The notes under the pieces: generated by a model
Seen by the model: the letters and a program-made list of their open reading frames with translations, nothing else
Told to the model about the DNA's origin: nothing
Databases searched by the model: none
Program-made: the position numbers and the translations under genes
Assembly (NCBI GenBank): GCA_950097015.1
Contig: CATNEN010000038.1
Location: 7,130,001 to 7,194,000 of the forward strand
Length of the DNA: 64,000 nucleotides
Reading direction: 5' to 3'
From: Macrostomum hystrix
Lineage: Eukaryota; Animalia; Platyhelminthes
In this document: piece by piece, positions 41,410 to 50,668 of the stretch
How positions within the stretch are numbered: the stretch's first letter is position 1
Layout: the number at the start of each line of letters is the position of its first letter

Positions 41410-43055
41410 AAGAGTCAGATGTGGTGATGGGAGAGAGTCAGATATGGTAATGACAGAGTCAGATATGGTAATGACAGAGTCAGATATGGTTCTCGGAGAG
41501 AGTCAGATATGGTAATGACAGAGTCAGATATGGTTCTCGGAGAGAGTCAGATATGGTTCTCGGAGAGAGTCAGATATGGTTCTCGGAGAGAGTCAGATAT
41601 GGTTCTCGGAGAGAGTCAGATATGGTTCTCGGAGAGAGTCAGATATGGGAATGGGAGAGTCAGATGTGGGAATGGGAGAGTCATATGGGGATGAGAGAGA
41701 GTCAGATATGGTTCTCGGAGAGATTTAGATATGGTTCTCGGAGAGAGTCAGATATGGGGATGGGAGAGAGTCAGATATGGGGATGGGAGAGAGTCAGATA
41801 TTGTTCTCGGAGAGAGTCAGATATTGTTCTCGGAGAGTCAGATATGGTTCTCGGAGAGAGTAAGATATGGTGATGAGAGAGAGTAAGATATGGTTCTCGG
41901 AGAGTCAGATATGGTTCTCGGAGAGAGTTAGATATGGTTCTCGGAGAGAGTAAGATATTGTTCTCGGAGAGTCAGATATGGTTCTCGGAGAGAGTCAGAT
42001 ATGGGGGTGGGAGAGAGTCAGATATGGTTCTCGGAGAGTCAGATATGGTTCTCGGAGAGAGTCAGATATGGTTCTCGGAGAGAGTCAGATATGGTTCTCG
42101 GAGAGAGTCAGATATGGGGATGGGAGAGAGTCAGATATTGTTCTCGGAGAGTCAGATATGGTTCTCGGAGAGAGTCAGATATGGGGATGGGAGAGAGTCA
42201 GATATTGTTCTCGGAGAGTCAGATATGGTTCTCGGAGAGAGTCAGATATGGGGATGGGAGAGAGTCAGATATGGTTCTCGGAGAGAGTCAGATATGGTTC
42301 TCGGAGAGAGTCAGATATGGTTCTCGGAGAGAGTCAGATATGGTTCTCGGAGAGAGTCAGATATGGTTCTCGGAGAGTCAGATATGGGAATGGGAGAGTC
42401 AGATGTGGGAATGGGAGAGTCATATGGGGATGAGAGAGAGTCAGATATGGTTCTCGGAGAGATTTAGATATGGTTCTCGGAGAGAGTCAGATATGGGGAT
42501 GGGAGAGAGTCAGATATTGTTCTCGGAGAGAGTCAGATATTGTTCTCGGAGAGTCAGATATGGTTCTCGGAGAGAGTAAGATATGGTGATGAGAGAGAGT
42601 AAGATATGGTTCTCGGAGAGTCAGATATGGTTCTCGGAGAGAGTTAGATATGGTTCTCGGAGAGAGTAAGATATTGTTCTCGGAGAGTCAGATATGGTTC
42701 TCGGAGAGAGTCAGATATGGGGGTGGGAGAGAGTCAGATATGGTTCTCGGAGAGTCAGATATGGTTCTCGGAGAGAGTCAGATATGGTTCTCGGAGAGAG
42801 TCAGATATGGTTCTCGGAGAGAGTCAGATATGGGGATGGGAGAGAGTCAGATATTGTTCTCGGAGAGTCAGATATGGTTCTCGGAGAGAGTCAGATATGG
42901 TTCTCGGAGAGAGTCAGATATGGGGATGGGAGAGAGTCAGATATTGTTCTCGGAGAGTCAGATATGGTTCTCGGAGAGAGTCAGATATGGGGATGGGAGA
43001 GAGTCAGATATGGTTCTCGGAGAGAGTCAGATATGGTGATGAGAGAGAATCAGAT
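41410..43055. repeat. 21/23-bp minisatellite with a 716-bp higher-order duplication
   Basis: Unit GAGAGTCAGATATGGTTCTCGGA and variants. The variant pattern at 41934 recurs at 42650. Confidence 0.95.
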
Positions 43056-43115
43056 ACGTTAGCTCGTAAATTTAAGCCATCTCTTCACACTTCAGCAGCA
43101 GCAACAATAGCAGAC

Positions 43116-46100
43116 ATGGCAGCCAACAAGACCGCTGTGATGAGCAAGAAGCGGGCATTCGTTGCCAATGGCGTTTTCCGCGCTGAGCTGGACGAGTTCC
43201 TGAAGCGTGAGCTGGCCGAGGATGGTTACTCTGGCATCGAGCTGCGAGTGACCCCAGCCAAGATTGAGGTGATAGTACTGGCCACCCGCACCCAGAGCGT
43301 GCTGGGCGAGAAGGGACGCAAGGTGCGCGAACTGACGGCGGTGCTGCAGAAGCGATTCGGCTTCGAGGACGGCCAGATTGAGATCTACGCCGAGAAGATG
43401 GCCAACAGGGGCCTGTCAGCTGTGGCTCAGGTGGGTTGCACGGATTCTTATTCGGAACTTCTTTATTCTGTATGAGCTTTCCTTGACGGCTGACCATCAG
43501 GTTGTGATAGCCACCCAAACTCATCACCGTCATCATTCTCTATATTCTTCTGTCGGCTATGATTAGAACACAACTGCTGTTCACATTCGTATTGTTAGTT
43601 TGTGACGATAGCTATTGTTTGATATGAGCCGCCCTTTAAGAATTGTTTTTTGCATTTTGTTTAATTAATGTCTACTACTAAAAGCAGTCTCAGTGCGTAT
43701 TTGTTAACTTTTTATATTGGCTACGATTAAAACACTTTCTGCTGTTCACATTCGTATAGCTTGCAAAAGTATGCCGACAGCAAAAATACTTTTATGAGCC
43801 AATCCAATTATGAAAAATCATTGCGTCACCCCTCCAACATCTTTACTTTGTGTCTAAAACCCTTACAGTCCACCAGGCTGTGGCTAGAATCTTCCCAAAA
43901 CCACAGGCTGTGGCTAGAATCTTCCCAAAACCACAGGCTGTGGCTAGAATCTTCCCAAAGCCACAGGCTGTGGCTAGAATCTTCCCAGACCCCCAGGCTG
44001 TGGCTAGAATCTTCCCAGACCCCAGGCTGTGGCTAGAATCTTCCCAGACCCCCAGGCTGTGGCTAGAATCTTCTCAAACATGAAGATGTCGGCTATGATT
44101 AGAACACAACTGCTGTTCAAATTCGTATTGTTGACTTTGTGACGATGGCAATAGTTCTGTATGAGCCGTCTCTAAAAGTAATTTTCGTTCGCATATATGC
44201 CTTGTTTTTTTTAGGACCCATTCTATCCATCGAGATATATCACATGGGATTTTTTGTTCGGTAGTGGTTGGGGTATGCTGCTCTTGGACCATAATCGGCT
44301 AAATCTTCTACCGGTTATTATCAGTCGGGATTAGACGTTAATTTAAATTTATGCATTAATTATGCTGGCAATGATTAGAACACTTCTGCTGTTCACATTC
44401 GTAACTTGCAAAAGTATGCCGACAGCAATTAACTTTTATGAGCCAATCCAATTATGAAAAATCATTGCGTCACCGCTCCAACATCTTTACTTTGTGTCTA
44501 AAACCCTTACAGACCACCAGGCTGTGGCTAGAATCTTCCCAAAACCACAGGCTGTGGATAGAATCTTCCCAAAGCCACAGGCTGTGGCTAGAATCTTCCC
44601 AAAACCACAGGCTGTGGCTAGAATCTTCCCAGACCCCCAGGCTGTGGCTAGAATCTTCCCAGACCCCCAGGCTGTGGCTAGAATCTTCCCAGACCCCCTG
44701 GCTGTGGCTAGAATCTTCTCAAACATGAAGATGTCGGCTATGATTAGAACACAACTGCTGTTCACATTCGTATTGTTGACTTTGTGACGATAGCAATAGT
44801 TCTGTATGAGCCGTCTCTAAAAGTAATTTTCGTTCGCATATATGCCTTGTTTTTTTTAGGACCCATTCTATCCATCGAGATATATCACATGGGATTTTTT
44901 GTTCGGTAGTGGTTGGGGTATGCTGCTCTTGGACCATAATCGGCTAAATCTTCTACCGGTTATTATCAGTCGGGATTAGACGTTAATTTAAATTTATGCA
45001 TTAATTATGCTGGCAATGATTAGAACACTTCTGCTGTTCACATTCGTAGAGCTTACAAAAGTATGCCGACAGCAATTAACTTTTATGAGCCTGCTTTAAT
45101 GCTTGTTTAAATATTGAAAAAAGAAGCCTTTTTGGGGCGAAATGATGTCGAGACTTGTAAATGTAGAAGTGTTAGATGTTGAAATCTTACCTACTCATTG
45201 TTACTGACCTACTTTGTGACCCACCCGTTATTCCTGACCTGCTTTGTGATCCACCAACCATTCCTGACCTACTTTGTGACCCACCCGCCATTCCTGACCT
45301 ACTATGTGAACCACCCGCCATTCCTGACCTACTTTGTGACCCACCCGCCATTCCTGACCTACCATGTGACCCACCCGCCATTCCTGACCTACTTTGTGAC
45401 CCACCCGCCATTCCTGACGTGCTTTGTGACCCACCCACCATTCACGACCTACTTTGTGACCCACCTGCCATTCCTGACCTACTTTGTGACTCACCCGCCA
45501 TTCCTGACCTGCTTTGTGACCCACCCGCCATTCCTGACCTACTTTGTGACCCACCTGCCATTCCTGACCTACTTTGTGACCCAACCGCCATTCCTGACCT
45601 ACTTTGTGACCCACCTGTCATTCCTGACCTGCTTTGTGACCCACCCGCCATTCTTGACTTACTTTGTGACCCACCTGCCATTCCTGACCTGCTTTGTGAC
45701 CCAATTAGTAATTTTACTATCGCATAAATTTGTGTATGGCTGGGTTCCATCTGGGTTGAATTTTCCATAGGCCGAGTCTCTTCGCTACAAACTCCTGGGC
45801 GGCCTGGCAGTCCGTCGGGCCTGCTACGGTGTGCTGCGCTTCATCATGGAGTCCGGAGCCAAGGGCGCCGAGGTCATTGTCAGCGGCAAGCTGCGAGGTC
45901 AGCGAGCCAAGTCCATGAAGTTCACCGAAGGCTTCATGATTCACAGCGGCGAGCCATCGATCCGATTCATCGACCGGTCTGTGCGACACGTCCAGCTGCG
46001 TCAGGGCGTTCTGGGCATCCAGGTGAGCGTCACGTGACCCACCTAGAGCTTAATAATAAGCACAATACACTATTAGGCATGACCGCTATGATTAAAACCC

Positions 46101-46409
46101 ACCTGCTGTTCACATTCGTAATATTTGTTTATGACGACAACTTTTTGTATTCTATATGAGCCGGTTAGAAAGCTTATTATCTGTCTCACTGTTCTTTTAG
46201 TTTCAAACTAATTAGTTGATAATTTGTTGTCGGTTCTCCAGGTGAAAATCATGCAGAACTGGGAGGCCCCAGCTGGCGGCGGCGCGCCACGCAAGCCCCT
46301 GCCTGATCACGTGACCATCGCCGATCCGAAAGATCAGACTATTCCGGCGCAGCCCTACTCGGAGAACAAGCAGCAGAAGCCGGCGGCCGAGGTCATGGCT
46401 GCAGCCTGA
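43116..46409 (+). CDS. RPS3: 40S ribosomal protein S3 (uS3), 244 aa, 3 exons
   Basis: Exons 43116-43430, 45771-46022, 46242-46409. Motifs [62 protein letters not shown] and PLPDHV. AATAAA at 46522. Confidence 0.98.
43554..43631 (+). ncRNA. C/D box snoRNA copy 1 (type A), 28S rRNA guide
   Basis: CGGC/GCCG terminal stem, C box ATGATTA, guide CAACTGCTGTTCACAT (complement of the conserved LSU sequence AUGUGAACAGCAGUUG), D' CGTA, C' GTGACGA, D ATGA. Confidence 0.8.
43717..43803 (+). ncRNA. C/D box snoRNA copy 2 (type B), C box degenerate (ACGATTA)
   Basis: ATTGGC/GCCAAT stem, CTGCTGTTCACATT-CGTA, C' ATGCCGA, D ATGA. Confidence 0.65.
43872..44075. repeat. 30-bp minisatellite (second array at 44515-44720)
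   Basis: Unit CAGGCTGTGGCTAGAATCTTCCCARAMCMC. Part of a 645-bp duplication. Confidence 0.93.
44090..44168 (+). ncRNA. C/D box snoRNA copy 3 (type A), guide carries a C>A mismatch
   Basis: Same boxes and stem as copy 1. Guide reads CAACTGCTGTTCAAAT. Confidence 0.65.
44366..44445 (+). ncRNA. C/D box snoRNA copy 4 (type B)
   Basis: TGGC/GCCA stem, ATGATTA, CTGCTGTTCACATT-CGTA, ATGCCGA, ATGA. Confidence 0.72.
44735..44813 (+). ncRNA. C/D box snoRNA copy 5 (type A)
   Basis: CGGC/GCCG stem, ATGATTA, CAACTGCTGTTCACATT-CGTA, GTGACGA, ATGA. Confidence 0.78.
45011..45092 (+). ncRNA. C/D box snoRNA copy 6 (type B)
   Basis: GGC/GCC stem, ATGATTA, CTGCTGTTCACATT-CGTA, ATGCCGA, ATGA. Confidence 0.72.
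45200..45702. repeat. 30-bp minisatellite, about 16 copies
   Basis: Unit TTCCTGACCTACTTTGTGACCCACCCGCCA. Confidence 0.96.
46082..46165 (+). ncRNA. C/D box snoRNA copy 7, in RPS3 intron 2
   Basis: ATGATTA, CTGCTGTTCACATT-CGTA, C' ATGACGA, D ATGA and a short terminal stem. Ends about 77 nt upstream of the 3' splice site, a typical spacing for intronic C/D snoRNAs. Confidence 0.8.
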
Positions 46410-46744
46410 GCAGTTTTAGACCTGGCGAATACGAGAAGCTGAGATAGCAAATGAGAGAACCCTTTCAAATGCTCATTGGTGGATACTGAATGCCTGTCTA
46501 TTCATCAAAGCCATTGTTATGAATAAAGATATTGAGCCCGCTTTGAAACTTGCAGGGCTGAGACACCTGACTCAGGTGTTTCCGTGTTTGCTAGCTTGGA
46601 TATTTTGTCTAGTTTTTTATTTTAAATTAACTTTTGAATAGGAACTATTTCTTTATCTGGTCTTCAAACTTACTGCAACAATTAACTAGTGTAAAATCTT
46701 GCGTTCGATATTCGATTTCCCAATAAAATTCCCTATTTTTCCAG

Positions 46745-49700
46745 TTGCGTCGACGCGCCTCAGGCTACTACAGCTTCTCGAAGCGGTCGGCTGCCGCCGG
46801 AGCTGCCGATGCTGCCGGCGGAAGCTCTGATATTTCTGGCCTACTGCCTTCGCCAGCTGCGTCGCCCGTTATCAACAGTCGGCCGACCTCCTCGGTGCTG
46901 ACAAGTCGCCAGCTGCCCGCCCAAGCTGATTTGTCCGTTCCGTCGCCATTTCAGCGTGGACCGCCCGGCCGATGCACCATGCCACTGCCCAGGCCGCACT
47001 ATCAGCGCAGCAACCAGCAGCTGCCGCCGCCGTCAGCCCGATGCCAGCATCAAAGTCCTAATGTTGTAGGTGGGCAGTCGGTTCTTCGCGACGCCGACGA
47101 GCAGACCAGCGTTCTCCGTGCTCTTCGAATCATTGAGACTAGAAAGCGTCGATCCTTGGCTCCGGCGAACGTCTGCGATCGCGATGCCGACGAGACTGCC
47201 GGTGGTGCAGCCGCTGCTGACGATGTAGATGCCGACGCTGAGAATTATTCTGTTGTCGACCTGGAGGCTTCAATGTCGAAGAAGAAGCGGCGACGTGTTA
47301 GTATAGCTGCTTCAGCATCGGCTGCAGCGCTAGACGACATTCTTGGCGATTCCACTATAGGCGCGACCGTTACTGATAATCCGGACTTTCAGGCGACGTC
47401 ATTGCGTGAGGTTCTTGGTGCTGGTCCAATTAAACTTCCGGTTGCTCCGCGGCGGCTGCCTCAGCTTCCGGTCCCACCAACTCTGTTCGAACCGCCTCAT
47501 AAGCAGCAGTCTGAACCGCAAGTGTCAAACATCACTGAGCCGCTTGTGCTGCCATTGCCTGCTACCACTGCCGATTCCCAAATCTCTGCCAGTGGCTATC
47601 ACTATCGCCATCAGCAGAAGCAGCAGCCACCTATATCTGAGATGCTAGTCTCACCGTCACCGTCCTGTGCCTCTCCCGCCGGTTCTACTTCGATGTCGGC
47701 ATCTTCTCGACGCCGCCTACAGCAGCCAACGCGCGTGACAGTGTCAGCTCTGGTCGCTAACCTTGAGCGTTCCAGGCATCGTGACGGCGACTTGCCTGTT
47801 GACGATGCCTCTATCAACGAGTCATCTGCCTCACTGTCTTCGCCGATAGGCCGTCTAGCGGCTGCTCGTCAGGCTCGCGAGCGTGACCGGCTGGCTAAGG
47901 CGAGTCGCCGAGAACGCATCCGTCGTCTACTGACCGAAGATTCTGGTACTCCTACCGGACGAGACAGTCTTGCCATCGCTCCTTCACCAGCAGGCGTCCA
48001 GTCGCCTTCGCTGGCTCCGGGGTTCTCTGGAACAGTTGCATCGCCCATTGTGTCTTTGCTAAGTCAGCCGAATTCTACTGTTGTGTCCAGTGTTGTGACA
48101 GCAGCCAGTCTAACAGGTTCAAATTCAGCCACTCCGGCTTTCATCCTACCTGCCTCCAGTGACAGCTCCGCCTCTTGCACTCCGATTGCTGCTGCGCCTG
48201 TAAAGAACTTGGCAGCTGTTAAAACGCCCGCGACAGATTCCGCTTCTGCCCAAGCAACTAAAAGTGCTTCATCGTTTTGTCAGCTTGCAAGCGCCAACTC
48301 TCAAGCACCTTCGACGTTCGGACACTCGGTTGCATCAAACACACCAACAGCTGCTCCAGTGTTTGGTCACTTAACAACATCCAACACTCAAGCTGCTGCT
48401 CCAGTGTTTGGTCAGTCAACAACATCCGGCTCTTCAGCTGCTGCTCCAGTGTTTGGTCACTCAGCAGCATCCAATACTCCAGCTCCAGTGTTTGGTCAGT
48501 CAGCAGCATCAAACACTCCAGCTCCAGTGTTTGGTCAGTCAGCAGCATCCAACACTCCAGCTCCAGTGTTGGGTCAGTCAGCAGCATCCAACACTACAGC
48601 TGCTGCTCCATTGTTTGGTCAGTCAGCAGCATCCAACACTCCAGCTGCTGCTCCAATGTTTGGTCAGTCAGCAGCATCCAACACTCCAGCTCCAGTGTTT
48701 GGTCAGCCAGCAGCATCCAACACTTCAGCTGCTGCTCCAGTGTTTGGTCAGTCAGCAGCACCTAACACTACAGCTGCTGCTCCAGTGTTTGGTCAGTCAG
48801 CAGCACTTAACACTACAGCTGCTGCTCCATTGTTTGGTCAGTCAGCAGCATCCAACACTCCAGCTGCTGCTCCAATGTTTGGTCAGTCAGCAGCATCCAA
48901 CACTCCAGCTCCAGTGTTTGGTCAGCCAGCAGCATCCAACACTTCAGCTGCTGCTCCAGTGTTTGGTCAGTCAGCAGCACCTAACACTACAGCTGCTGCT
49001 CCAATGTTTGGTCAGTCAGCAGCACCTAACACTACAGCTGCTGCTCCATTGTTTGGTCAGTCAGCAGCATCCAACACTCCAGCTGCTGCTCCAATGTTTG
49101 GTCAGTCAGCAGCATCCAACACTCCAGCTGCTGCTCCAATGTTTGGTCAGTCAGCAGCATCCAACACTCCAGCTGCTGCTCCAATGTTTGGTCAGTCAGC
49201 AGCATCCAACACTCCAGCTCCAGTGTTTAGTCAGTCAGCAGCATCCAACACTCCAGCTCCAGTGTTTGGTCAGTCAGCAGCATCCAACACTCCAGCTTCA
49301 GTGTTTGGTCAGTCAGCAGCATCCAACACTCCAGCTCCAGTGTTTGGTCAGTCAGCAGCATCCAACACTCCAGCTCCAGTGTTTGGTCAGTCAGCAGCAT
49401 CCAACACTCCAGCTCCAGTGTTTGGTCAGTCAACTTCAAGCTCATCGAATGCAGTCGCATTTGGTCAGTCAAATGCTAGTACCAATTCTTCAGCTTTTTG
49501 TTTTGGCAAGAGCGATTCTAGGGACTCGAATGCTACTTCTGCTCCGGTTATGTTCGGCAAATCAGAGCCCACCATGATATCGACAGCTCCAGTTTTCAAC
49601 CAATCAGGATCCACCACATCAACAGCTGTATTTGGCCAATCAGCATCCAGCAAGTCATCCACCGTCTCTGTGTTTGGACAATCTGCTCCCGCCGTGACTA

Positions 49701-50668
49701 CTGCTTCATCGTTAACCTTTGGAAATGGAGTTTCCTCCAATGCATTAGCTGCTAACAAATCTGCTCAACCTGGTTTGAGTGCACCAACCACTGTGTTTGG
49801 TCAGTCTGTCACAAGTTCATCCTCTGCTACATCCTTGTTTGGCCAGTCAGCTTCCAGTCTGTCTTCAGGGACGTTTTCCTTTGGCAAATCTACTACATCG
49901 GAAGCTTCAAATGCTTTAAAGTTATTTGGACAATCTGCTTCTGGTTCATCTACGACTTCACTGTTCGGTCAGCAATCAACCCCGGCAGCTACCACAGGCA
50001 TGTTTGGAAAGGCACCTTCCGCTGCGTCATCTGGTGGTACTCTGTTCGGCCAGTCTCCTGCTGCTACTAGTGCACCTTCCGTGTCTATTTTTGGTCAGTC
50101 TAAAACATCTGCGGGTCCAGTGTTCGGCCAATCAGCTTCTAACACGTCATCGGCCGCTCCAGTGTTCGGCCAATCGGCTTCTAACACGTCATCGGCCGCT
50201 CCAGTGTTCGGCCAATCGGCTTCTAACACGTCAACAGTTTTCGGCCAATCGCAGAGCGGCTCCAGTCAGTCAACCGTGGCCAAACCTGCCCAGTTGTCTA
50301 ACGCTTCTCCCAATCCATTTACGTTCGGCAAATCGGCTTCAAATCCCAGCTTTAGCTTTAGTTCAAGCTCTGCTGCCGATGCTAAAGCGCCGCCTCCTTC
50401 GTCTTCTGGCGCTTCCAGTGGGTTCACCTTTGGCCAGGCTGCTGCATCATCCACGTCATCAGCTGGCTCGCTCTTCAGCTTTGGACAGCAACAACAGCAG
50501 CAGCCGCCGTCCTCGACTACATCAGGCGGCACCACCGGCTTTAACTTTTCTCTTGGCGCGGCAACTGCCGGAGCATCTCCCGCAGCTGCTCAGGCGCCGA
50601 GTTTCAACTTCTCAGCTGGCGGCGACGCAGCCAGGCGAGCTCCGGTGAAGCCTCGAAGGCGGCGCTAA
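46745..50668 (+). CDS. FG-repeat nucleoporin, POM121/Nup153-like, single coding exon, start codon absent from the genome at the ORF 5' end
   Basis: More than 40 xFG repeats (PVFGQS, FSFG, FTFG), basic NLS-like clusters (TRKRRS, KKKRRR) and a basic C-terminus (PVKPRRRR). The ORF opens directly after the acceptor TTTTTCCAG (46736-46744). First in-frame ATG is at 46979. Confidence 0.82.
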   Translation: MRRRASGYYSFSKRSAAAGAADAAGGSSDISGLLPSPAASPVINSRPTSSVLTSRQLPAQADLSVPSPFQRGPPGRCTMPLPRPHYQRSNQQLPPPSARCQHQSPNVVGGQSVLRDADEQTSVLRALRIIETRKRRSLAPANVCDRDADETAGGAAAADDVDADAENYSVVDLEASMSKKKRRRVSIAASASAAALDDILGDSTIGATVTDNPDFQATSLREVLGAGPIKLPVAPRRLPQLPVPPTLFEPPHKQQSEPQVSNITEPLVLPLPATTADSQISASGYHYRHQQKQQPPISEMLVSPSPSCASPAGSTSMSASSRRRLQQPTRVTVSALVANLERSRHRDGDLPVDDASINESSASLSSPIGRLAAARQARERDRLAKASRRERIRRLLTEDSGTPTGRDSLAIAPSPAGVQSPSLAPGFSGTVASPIVSLLSQPNSTVVSSVVTAASLTGSNSATPAFILPASSDSSASCTPIAAAPVKNLAAVKTPATDSASAQATKSASSFCQLASANSQAPSTFGHSVASNTPTAAPVFGHLTTSNTQAAAPVFGQSTTSGSSAAAPVFGHSAASNTPAPVFGQSAASNTPAPVFGQSAASNTPAPVLGQSAASNTTAAAPLFGQSAASNTPAAAPMFGQSAASNTPAPVFGQPAASNTSAAAPVFGQSAAPNTTAAAPVFGQSAALNTTAAAPLFGQSAASNTPAAAPMFGQSAASNTPAPVFGQPAASNTSAAAPVFGQSAAPNTTAAAPMFGQSAAPNTTAAAPLFGQSAASNTPAAAPMFGQSAASNTPAAAPMFGQSAASNTPAAAPMFGQSAASNTPAPVFSQSAASNTPAPVFGQSAASNTPASVFGQSAASNTPAPVFGQSAASNTPAPVFGQSAASNTPAPVFGQSTSSSSNAVAFGQSNASTNSSAFCFGKSDSRDSNATSAPVMFGKSEPTMISTAPVFNQSGSTTSTAVFGQSASSKSSTVSVFGQSAPAVTTASSLTFGNGVSSNALAANKSAQPGLSAPTTVFGQSVTSSSSATSLFGQSASSLSSGTFSFGKSTTSEASNALKLFGQSASGSSTTSLFGQQSTPAATTGMFGKAPSAASSGGTLFGQSPAATSAPSVSIFGQSKTSAGPVFGQSASNTSSAAPVFGQSASNTSSAAPVFGQSASNTSTVFGQSQSGSSQSTVAKPAQLSNASPNPFTFGKSASNPSFSFSSSSAADAKAPPPSSSGASSGFTFGQAAASSTSSAGSLFSFGQQQQQQPPSSTTSGGTTGFNFSLGAATAGASPAAAQAPSFNFSAGGDAARRAPVKPRRRR

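What the first reader, a model, noticed from the sequence alone, without database searches (positions are those of the whole stretch)
46720..46981. Nucleoporin ORF with no early start codon opens in frame exactly at a splice acceptor: candidate start codon donated by the spliced leader
Seen: an in-frame TAA, then CCCTATTTTTCCAG|TTG CGT CGA CGC..., so the 1307-codon frame starts at the first base after the AG (46745). The first in-frame ATG is 78 codons later (46979) and is preceded by an out-of-frame ATG at 46809. Only 335 bp separate it from the RPS3 stop, with no credible upstream coding exon. Established: flatworm spliced leaders end in AUG, which can act as the initiator Met in Schistosoma. 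Inference: SL trans-splicing creates M-L-R-R-R-A-S-G..., so the protein depends on the SL RNA for its start.
Basis: partly seen in the sequence, partly recalled or inferred. Interest (0 to 1): 0.85.

Follow-up and report, generated by a model that had tools for sequence, protein, structure and literature searches.

The report
Nucleoporin start codon from spliced leader
In this Macrostomum flatworm, an FG-repeat nuclear-pore gene downstream of RPS3 has no start codon at the head of its frame; RNA assemblies show the trans-spliced leader, which ends in AUG, joined exactly in frame, a confirmed new example of a mechanism already known in flatworms.

Summary
RNA-derived contigs from two runs of one study start with the last 22-23 letters of the spliced leader (...GCGAAGACTCAATTTATTGCATG) and continue from window 46745 with no mismatch. 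So the acceptor is a real SL trans-splice site. The leader's terminal AUG lies directly in frame with the 1307-codon FG-nucleoporin ORF.

The genome matches M. hystrix (220 Mb, 42 contigs). Its SL genes end ...GCATG|GTAAG, and the window holds no SL copy.

An old paralogue on another contig also sits about 357 nt behind an RPS3 paralogue. It has the same build: an in-frame TAA, a pyrimidine tract, then AG|CTG CGC CGT. The peptide LRR(R/H)A(S/K)GYYSFSKRSA is kept from the first codon after the acceptor, with 6 synonymous and 3 non-synonymous changes in 16 codons. The outron is unalignable. This is the best-conserved block of an N-terminal half that is 33% identical overall.

The internal Met79 is not conserved: it is Val in the paralogue and Ile in the M. 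lignano model.

Translation itself was not shown. The mechanism was published in 2006 (Cheng et al.), and the M. hystrix genome paper notes the leader's final ATG as a start codon. This scan already holds 22 such notes on other DNA of this genome, one of them confirmed (SIRT6). Verdict: supported, but a new member of a known kind.

The parts
43116..46409 (+). Upstream RPS3 gene: exons 43116-43430, 45769-46022 and 46242-46409, with stop TGA at 46407-46409
   Evidence: Translations. The RNA contigs skip 46023-46241 (GT..AG) and join exon 1 to 45769 in all four runs.
46410..46600 (+). RPS3 3'UTR, with AATAAA at 46523-46528. Contig ends lie at 46540 and 46598-46600.
   Evidence: table 8; sequence.
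46601..46744 (+). Outron or intercistronic spacer: 27% GC, no RNA contig, ending in a pyrimidine tract and AG. It contains the in-frame TAA at 46724-46726.
   Evidence: It is unalignable with the paralogue's outron (25% ungapped identity).
46730..46744 (+). SL trans-splice acceptor TCCCTATTTTTCCAG
   Evidence: A 1784-nt contig in each of X6 and X7 has 22 loose letters GCGAAGACTCAATTTATTGCAT and then lies on 46744 onwards.
46745..50668 (+). Single coding exon of the FG-repeat nucleoporin-like protein: codons 2-1308 of the inferred protein plus the stop. The initiator codon is not in the genome at this locus.
46745..46792 (+). Conserved N-terminal motif LRRRASGYYSFSKRSA
   Evidence: 14 of 16 residues are identical in the C29 paralogue, with 6 synonymous changes. 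A 16-residue window inside this N-terminal block (alignment columns 7-22, starting at the Gly of GYYSFSK) is the best-conserved of the N-terminal half. YYSFSKR is also present in M. lignano P0001.
46809..46811 (+). Out-of-frame ATG (+1 frame, 30-codon ORF)
46972..46974 (+). Second out-of-frame ATG (+2 frame, 29-codon ORF)
46979..46981 (+). First genomic in-frame ATG (codon 79 of the genomic frame, context CACCATGC). It is not conserved.
48332..49432 (+). Homogenised FG-repeat array (45-nt period, about 25 copies) inside the ORF

Best explanation
The FG-repeat nucleoporin-like gene at 46745-50668 lies downstream of RPS3 on the same strand, probably as the second gene of an operon. Its pre-mRNA is processed by spliced-leader trans-splicing at the acceptor ...TTTTTCCAG|TTG. 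The leader exon (35 nt in the SL genes read here, ...CUCAAUUUAUUGCAUG) ends in AUG. The mature mRNA therefore reads ...UUGC AUG UUG CGU CGA CGC..., and this AUG is the first in the message and in frame with the whole ORF. Ribosomes most likely start there and make M-L-R-R-R-A-S-G-Y-Y-S-F-S-K-R-S-A.... The gene carries no initiator codon of its own for the conserved N-terminus and depends on trans-splicing for it. Shown: the SL junction in RNA, the in-frame geometry, the ATG end of the SL genes, and protein-level conservation from the first codon after the acceptor. Inferred: actual initiation at the SL AUG, the operon (polycistronic) origin, and trans-splicing of the paralogue.
For:: in runs X6 and X7 a 1784-nt contig (word depth about 20) starts with GCGAAGACTCAATTTATTGCAT and then matches 46744-48300 with 0 other letters. 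The same runs splice the RPS3 intron, so they are RNA. No contig covers 46601-43.
19 exact SL genes read CGGTCTCTTACTGCGAAGACTCAATTTATTGCATG|GTAAG, identical to the published M. lignano SL (PMC8629364).
there is no SL copy in the 64-kb window, so the letters come in trans.
the paralogue on G000:C29 has TAA, a pyrimidine tract, then AG|CTG CGC CGT CAC..., 357 nt behind an RPS3 paralogue.
over the first 16 codons pS is 0.48 and pN is 0.085. The first 48 nt are 81% identical, against 25% in the 80 nt before the acceptor.
the N-terminal block is the best conserved of a region that is 33% identical overall.
Met79 aligns to Val (paralogue) and Ile (M. lignano), while SRPTSSVLT, upstream of Met79, is kept in M. 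lignano.
Literature: the SL AUG is used as initiator in Schistosoma (Cheng et al. 2006, as summarised in PMC9851317), and PMC10468722 flags the Macrostomum SL's final ATG as a start codon.
Against: There are no protein-level or ribosome data. The SL AUG has a weak Kozak context (U at -3, U at +4), whereas ATG 46979 sits in CACCAUGC, a strong context, so some leaky scanning to a shorter isoform is possible. The RNA support comes from assembled contigs of two runs of a single study, and contigs drop rare variants and cannot show minor isoforms. The codon-usage test of the 78 codons was uninformative. The M. lignano model (P0001) reads the first 7 codons in another frame, although that model is full of frameshifts.
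Confidence: 0.85

Rival explanations
1. The mRNA is trans-spliced as shown, but the functional protein starts at the genomic ATG 46979 (Met79). On this reading the 78 upstream codons are 5'UTR, or only a minor N-terminal extension.
For: ATG 46979 has a strong Kozak context (CACCAUGC) and the SL AUG a weak one. An open frame over 78 GC-rich codons has roughly a 0.1 chance by composition (one search shows few stops in the other frames as well).
Against: The SL AUG is the first AUG and is in frame. Two out-of-frame AUGs (46809, 46972) precede Met79. The peptide is conserved from the first codon after the acceptor, with mostly synonymous changes. Met79 is Val or Ile in relatives. The paralogue's first internal ATG lies elsewhere, at codon 57 of its genomic frame.
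Confidence: 0.08
2. A cis-spliced upstream exon, for example 46556-46575 or one further upstream, donates the start codon in the main isoform, and the SL form is secondary.
For: None was found. Assembled contigs can miss minor isoforms.
Against: In one search the only contig reaching 46745 in each of the two runs carries SL letters. Positions 46556-46575 lie inside contiguous RPS3 3'UTR contigs running to 46598-46600, with no joint there. The only joint reported in 45740-48300 is the RPS3 intron.
Confidence: 0.02
3. The conserved 48 nt after the acceptor is an RNA-level element, such as a trans-splicing enhancer, rather than coding sequence. Alternatively, translation starts at the near-cognate TTG/CTG first codon without need of the SL.
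For: The first codon is TTG here and CTG in the paralogue, and both are near-cognate starts.
Against: Six of the nine nucleotide differences are synonymous, five of them at third codon positions, which is the signature of protein-level rather than RNA-level constraint. In the observed mRNA an AUG sits immediately upstream and in frame, so a near-cognate start is not needed.
Confidence: 0.03

Closest known systems
Flatworm SL 3'-terminal AUG as initiator methionine (Cheng, Cohen, Ndegwa and Davis, J Biol Chem 2006; 'slORFs' of PMC9851317)
   Same: The SL ends in AUG, it is joined in frame to an ORF that lacks its own start at the conserved N-terminus, and the recipient gene depends on trans-splicing for its initiator. 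According to PMC9851317, 28% of S. mansoni trans-spliced transcripts are in frame and more than 40 cDNAs need the SL AUG.
   Different: The published functional tests are in Schistosoma. Here the host is a free-living macrostomid and no translation data exist. This case adds retention of the arrangement across an old gene-pair duplication.
SL trans-splicing and operons in Macrostomum (PMC8629364, PMC5730564, PMC10468722)
   Same: The 35-nt SL is identical. The downstream gene follows an upstream gene's poly(A) site by a short spacer. In M. lignano about 15% of genes are assigned to operons, some of which start with a non-trans-spliced gene.
   Different: None of the held papers reports this gene or a survey of SL-AUG-dependent ORFs in Macrostomum. 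PMC10468722 only remarks that the final ATG is a likely start codon and left it untrimmed for annotation.
SIRT6 case confirmed earlier in this scan (s1-339199), plus about 20 further first-reader notes in this genome
   Same: Same genome, same mechanism and the same kind of RNA-contig evidence.
   Different: A different gene. The claims of that note were not re-tested here.
FG nucleoporins (Pfam PF13634)
   Same: About 750 residues of xFG/FGQ repeats, with a basic NLS-like KKKRRR patch and a basic C-terminal tail.
   Different: The N-terminal 520 residues match no Pfam family, PDB sequence or Atlas cluster. Orthology to a named nucleoporin is not established.

Membership tests
SL-AUG-initiated ORF (flatworm slORF, Cheng et al. 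2006) | The organism's spliced leader ends in AUG directly before the GU donor | tested here: met
   ...TTGCATG|GTAAG in 19 exact copies, and a second SL-like family also ends GCATG|GTAAG.
SL-AUG-initiated ORF (flatworm slORF, Cheng et al. 2006) | The mRNA carries the SL joined at the acceptor in question | tested here: met
   contigs in X6 and X7 have 22 SL letters and then 46744 onwards; no SL copy in cis.
SL-AUG-initiated ORF (flatworm slORF, Cheng et al. 2006) | The SL AUG is in frame with the main ORF, with no stop between them | tested here: met
   AUG|UUG CGU..., open for 1307 codons.
SL-AUG-initiated ORF (flatworm slORF, Cheng et al. 2006) | Conserved coding sequence reaches the acceptor, and there is no conserved genomic AUG to serve instead | tested here: met
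   the paralogue keeps the motif from codon 1, and Met79 is not conserved.
SL-AUG-initiated ORF (flatworm slORF, Cheng et al. 2006) | Translation actually initiates at the SL AUG | not testable with these tools
   No Ribo-seq or proteomics is reachable.
FG nucleoporin | FG-repeat region | tested here: met
   PF13634, E=1.4e-44, 10 stretches.
FG nucleoporin | Orthology to a named pore protein, or localisation at the pore | tested here: inconclusive
   Searches found only the M. lignano model P0001. No named Nup domain was found.
SL-resolved operon, downstream gene | Same strand, short spacer after the upstream gene's 3' end, and SL acceptor on the downstream gene | tested here: met
   RPS3 contigs end at 46540-46600 and the SL acceptor is at 46745. 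The same pairing is seen in the paralogue and in the M. lignano fused model.
SL-resolved operon, downstream gene | A polycistronic precursor spans both genes | tested here: inconclusive
   No contig covers 46601-46743, but contigs drop rare precursors.

The most novel reading that the evidence does not exclude
Dependence on the leader's AUG is old and selectively maintained here. The RPS3 to FG-nucleoporin gene pair was duplicated before M. hystrix and M. lignano split. Both copies kept the start-less architecture. The best-conserved element of the protein is the N-terminal motif that directly follows the donated Met. That would make trans-splicing an obligatory gate: only processed mRNA, never the polycistronic precursor, could produce a nucleoporin with its functional N-terminal signal.
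Probability: 0.3. Interest if true: 0.45.

Novelty: new member of a known kind. Interest (0 to 1): 0.3.

Why it matters
This is a practical annotation point. Gene finders that require a genomic ATG will either truncate this protein by 78 residues, losing its best-conserved motif, or fuse it to RPS3, as the UniProt M. lignano model A0A1I8FFD9 does. It also adds a case backed by RNA and comparative evidence, in a free-living flatworm, to a mechanism tested so far mainly in schistosomes. The many similar notes in this genome suggest that a systematic count of SL-AUG-dependent genes in Macrostomum would be worthwhile. It does not open a new question.

Tried and rejected
- **Protein searches for orthologues.** These were whole protein, residues 1-330; 518-aa piece, residues 1-200; profile against 1.84 billion representatives. 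They gave only one hit, the M. lignano fused model P0001. Conservation therefore rests on one paralogue and one poor model.
- **DNA around P0001.** The M. lignano acceptor and frame could only be guessed from the protein model. Its 'D|CV' junction is what the same acceptor followed by T-TGC-GT would give, but the next 5 residues are in another frame. That model is riddled with frameshifts even in RPS3, so I draw no conclusion from it.
- **Codon-usage and GC3 scoring of the 78 codons.** This was uninformative: frames 0 and +1 scored alike. The tiny training set was also partly out of frame, because I placed the RPS3 ATG one base off; it is at 43116.
- **Naming the nucleoporin.** Pfam on the N-terminal halves, the ESM Atlas and PDB sequences gave nothing usable. 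The single PDB hit, E=0.027 to an uncharacterised 73-aa chain, I take as chance.
- **Other scans.** The Rfam scan of an SL gene gave no SL family hit. The bacterial-type promoter/terminator scan is not relevant to a eukaryote and only flagged a hairpin.
- **Paralogue trans-splicing.** The paralogue's own trans-splicing could not be checked.
- **Handling of sequences.** The joined mRNA was used only inside one script, to list the AUGs.

Full report
**1. Observation**

- There is an in-frame TAA at 46724-46726.
- The pyrimidine-rich acceptor TCCCTATTTTTCCAG ends at 46744.
- TTG CGT CGA CGC follows from 46745.
- The mechanical ORF list gives 46745..50668, 1307 codons.
- The first in-frame ATG is 46979, which is codon 79.
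Each opens an ORF of about 30 codons.
- The upstream gene is RPS3, with exons 43116-43430, 45769-46022 and 46242-46409. Its stop TGA is at 46407-46409, leaving 335 nt to the acceptor.
- The ORF product is an FG-repeat protein (Pfam PF13634, E=1.4e-44). Its N-terminal half of about 520 residues has no family match.

By composition alone, an open frame over 78 GC-rich codons has about a 10% chance. The other two frames carry only 1 and 2 stops. The bare pattern is therefore not significant by itself.

**2. Which genome**

The window is contig 38 of a 220,453,370-base, 42-contig assembly. That matches the published Macrostomum hystrix assembly, described as about 220 Mb in 42 contigs (PMC10468722). 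Earlier notes of this scan name the same species.

**3. The leader**

Searching the genome with the 3' part of the published M. lignano leader plus its donor gave 19 exact copies of ...GAAGACTCAATTTATTGCATG|GTAAG. They lie in arrays of about 11.6 kb period. A second, much larger family reads ...GAAGACTCTCTTTTTTGCATG|GTAAG and sits in a 927-bp array. Reading one gene gives CGGTCTCTTACTGCGAAGACTCAATTTATTGCATG|GTAAGACACC.... This is identical to the 35-nt M. lignano SL (PMC8629364). Both kinds end in ATG. There is no copy of the leader anywhere in the 64-kb window, even allowing 3 mismatches.

**4. RNA evidence**

I laid Logan contigs of four runs on 45740-48300. All four runs splice out the RPS3 intron 46023-46241 and join exon 1 to 45769, so they are RNA.

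In X6 and X7 (one study, organism C), a 1784-nt contig with word depth about 20 begins with 22 loose letters, GCGAAGACTCAATTTATTGCAT. It then lies on 46744-48300 with no differing letter. The G at 46744 is shared between the leader's ATG and the genomic AG. By the GT-AG rule the junction is SL...AUG|UUGCGUCGACGC.

RPS3 contigs end at 46540 or 46598-46600, after the AATAAA at 46523. No contig lies on 46601-46743.

The acceptor is thus a genuine SL trans-splice site. In the mature mRNA the first AUG is the leader's, it is in frame, and it is followed by 1307 open codons. The limits are that these are assembled contigs from two runs of one study. They show presence, not the absence of minor isoforms.

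**5. Comparative evidence that the 78 codons are translated**

A six-frame search of the genome with the first 518 residues found one paralogue, on contig 29. The match starts at query residue 1 and lies in a 1390-codon open frame.

Its DNA has the same design. An RPS3 paralogue ends in TAG. About 357 nt later come an in-frame TAA, TTT, and CAG|CTG CGC CGT CAC GCT AAA GGC TAC TAC AGC TTC TCG AAG CGG TCA GCC.

The two proteins are 33% identical over the N-terminal half. The first 16 residues, however, are 14/16 identical: LRRRASGYYSFSKRSA against LRRHAKGYYSFSKRSA. A 16-residue window within this N-terminal block (alignment columns 7-22, 14/16 identical) is the best-conserved of the whole region.

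Over those 16 codons there are 6 synonymous and 3 non-synonymous changes (pS 0.48, pN 0.085). Nucleotide identity is 81% in the first 48 nt of the exon and 25%, which is random, in the 80 nt before the acceptor. Constraint at the protein level therefore begins exactly at the splice site.

The only other relative found in 1.84 billion representatives and in the 5.8-billion collection is UniProt A0A1I8FFD9 of M. lignano. This gene model wrongly fuses RPS3 to this nucleoporin. It is full of frameshifts, but it shows three things:
- The RPS3-nucleoporin adjacency exists in that species too, and that copy is closer to the window's copy than the C29 paralogue is. The duplication therefore predates the split of the two species.
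- YYSFSKR and SRPTSSVLT, both upstream of Met79, are conserved.
- Met79 is Ile there, and it is Val in the paralogue.

The paralogue's first internal in-frame ATG is at a different place, codon 57 of its genomic frame. So no conserved genomic ATG can account for the conserved N-terminus.

**6. Mechanism**

Most likely (0.85), RPS3 and the nucleoporin are co-transcribed or at least closely linked. The nucleoporin mRNA is capped by trans-splicing of the SL at 46745, and ribosomes initiate at the leader's terminal AUG, giving MLRRRASGYYSFSKRSA....

The shown steps are the junction, the frame, the leader's sequence and protein-level conservation from the acceptor onwards. The inferred steps are initiation at that AUG, the polycistronic precursor and trans-splicing of the paralogue.

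One caveat is that the SL AUG has a weak context (U at -3), while ATG 46979 sits in CACCAUGC. Some leaky scanning to a shorter isoform cannot be excluded, although two out-of-frame AUGs intervene.

**7. Comparison with what is known**

All reported flatworm leaders end in AUG, and it can serve as initiator. Cheng et al. 2006 (J Biol Chem 281:733) could not be read here. As summarised in PMC9851317, they reported that 28% of S. mansoni trans-spliced transcripts are in frame and that more than 40 cDNAs need the SL AUG. PMC12582326 restates this for parasitic flatworms. The M. hystrix genome paper explicitly notes that the SL's final ATG is probably a translation start codon, and kept it in the reads for annotation (PMC10468722). 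The held Macrostomum papers give no survey of such genes and do not mention this one.

Within this scan, 22 notes on other DNA of the same genome propose the same thing, and one (SIRT6, s1-339199) was confirmed with the same kind of evidence. I did not re-test those notes.

**8. Verdict**

This is a new member of a known kind, not a new mechanism.

The modest extra interest has two sources. The start-less architecture and the RPS3 linkage have survived an old duplication. The residues immediately after the donated Met are the protein's best-conserved N-terminal motif.

**Housekeeping**
- The protein tools show the first residue of the genomic exon as M only because table 11 translates a leading TTG that way. 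The codon is Leu.

Noticed in passing
L009 (G000:C29:1740457-1744431), minus strand: RPS3 paralogue stop at 2835-2833, nucleoporin paralogue from 2475: The whole two-gene unit, RPS3 followed by an FG-nucleoporin, exists twice in the genome with deep divergence (33% identity in the nucleoporin N-terminal half). The spacer length is nearly the same (357 vs 335 nt).
   Followed up: partly
P0001 = UniProt A0A1I8FFD9 (M. lignano): A public gene model named '40S ribosomal protein S3' is a chimera of RPS3 and this nucleoporin, with many frameshift-like garbled stretches. It is an annotation error caused by the operon-like spacing and the missing ATG.
   Followed up: partly
G000:C39:12667898-12753120 (not in the window): About 70 or more tandem copies (927-bp period) of a second SL-like gene whose exon ends ...GAAGACTCTCTTTTTTGCATG|GTAAG. 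The mRNA studied here carries the other (CTCAATTTATTGCATG) type. Whether the variant is expressed or specialised is unknown.
   Followed up: no
window 43874-44078, 44513-44723, 45204-45703: Tandem arrays with a 30-bp period lie inside the long RPS3 intron 1. Two of them share the same unit. Another first-reader note reads this intron as holding snoRNA copies.
   Followed up: no
window 42010-43056: A satellite of about 1 kb with a 23-bp period (about 47 copies) lies directly upstream of the RPS3 5' end.
   Followed up: no
window 43076-43116: RPS3 RNA contigs extend about 331-355 nt before exon 2, which is about 16-40 nt upstream of the ATG. That reaches a CTCTTC pyrimidine stretch that looks like a TOP-type start. 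Whether RPS3 is itself trans-spliced could not be seen.
   Followed up: no
window 46560-46582: A 10-bp hairpin (GAGACACCTGA/CTC/AGGTGTTTC) in the RPS3 3'UTR lies between the two apparent contig ends (46540 and about 46600).
   Followed up: no
window 48332-49432: The FG-repeat core is a highly homogenised 45-nt (and 219-nt) tandem array, about 88% identical between units, suggesting recent expansion or conversion.
   Followed up: no
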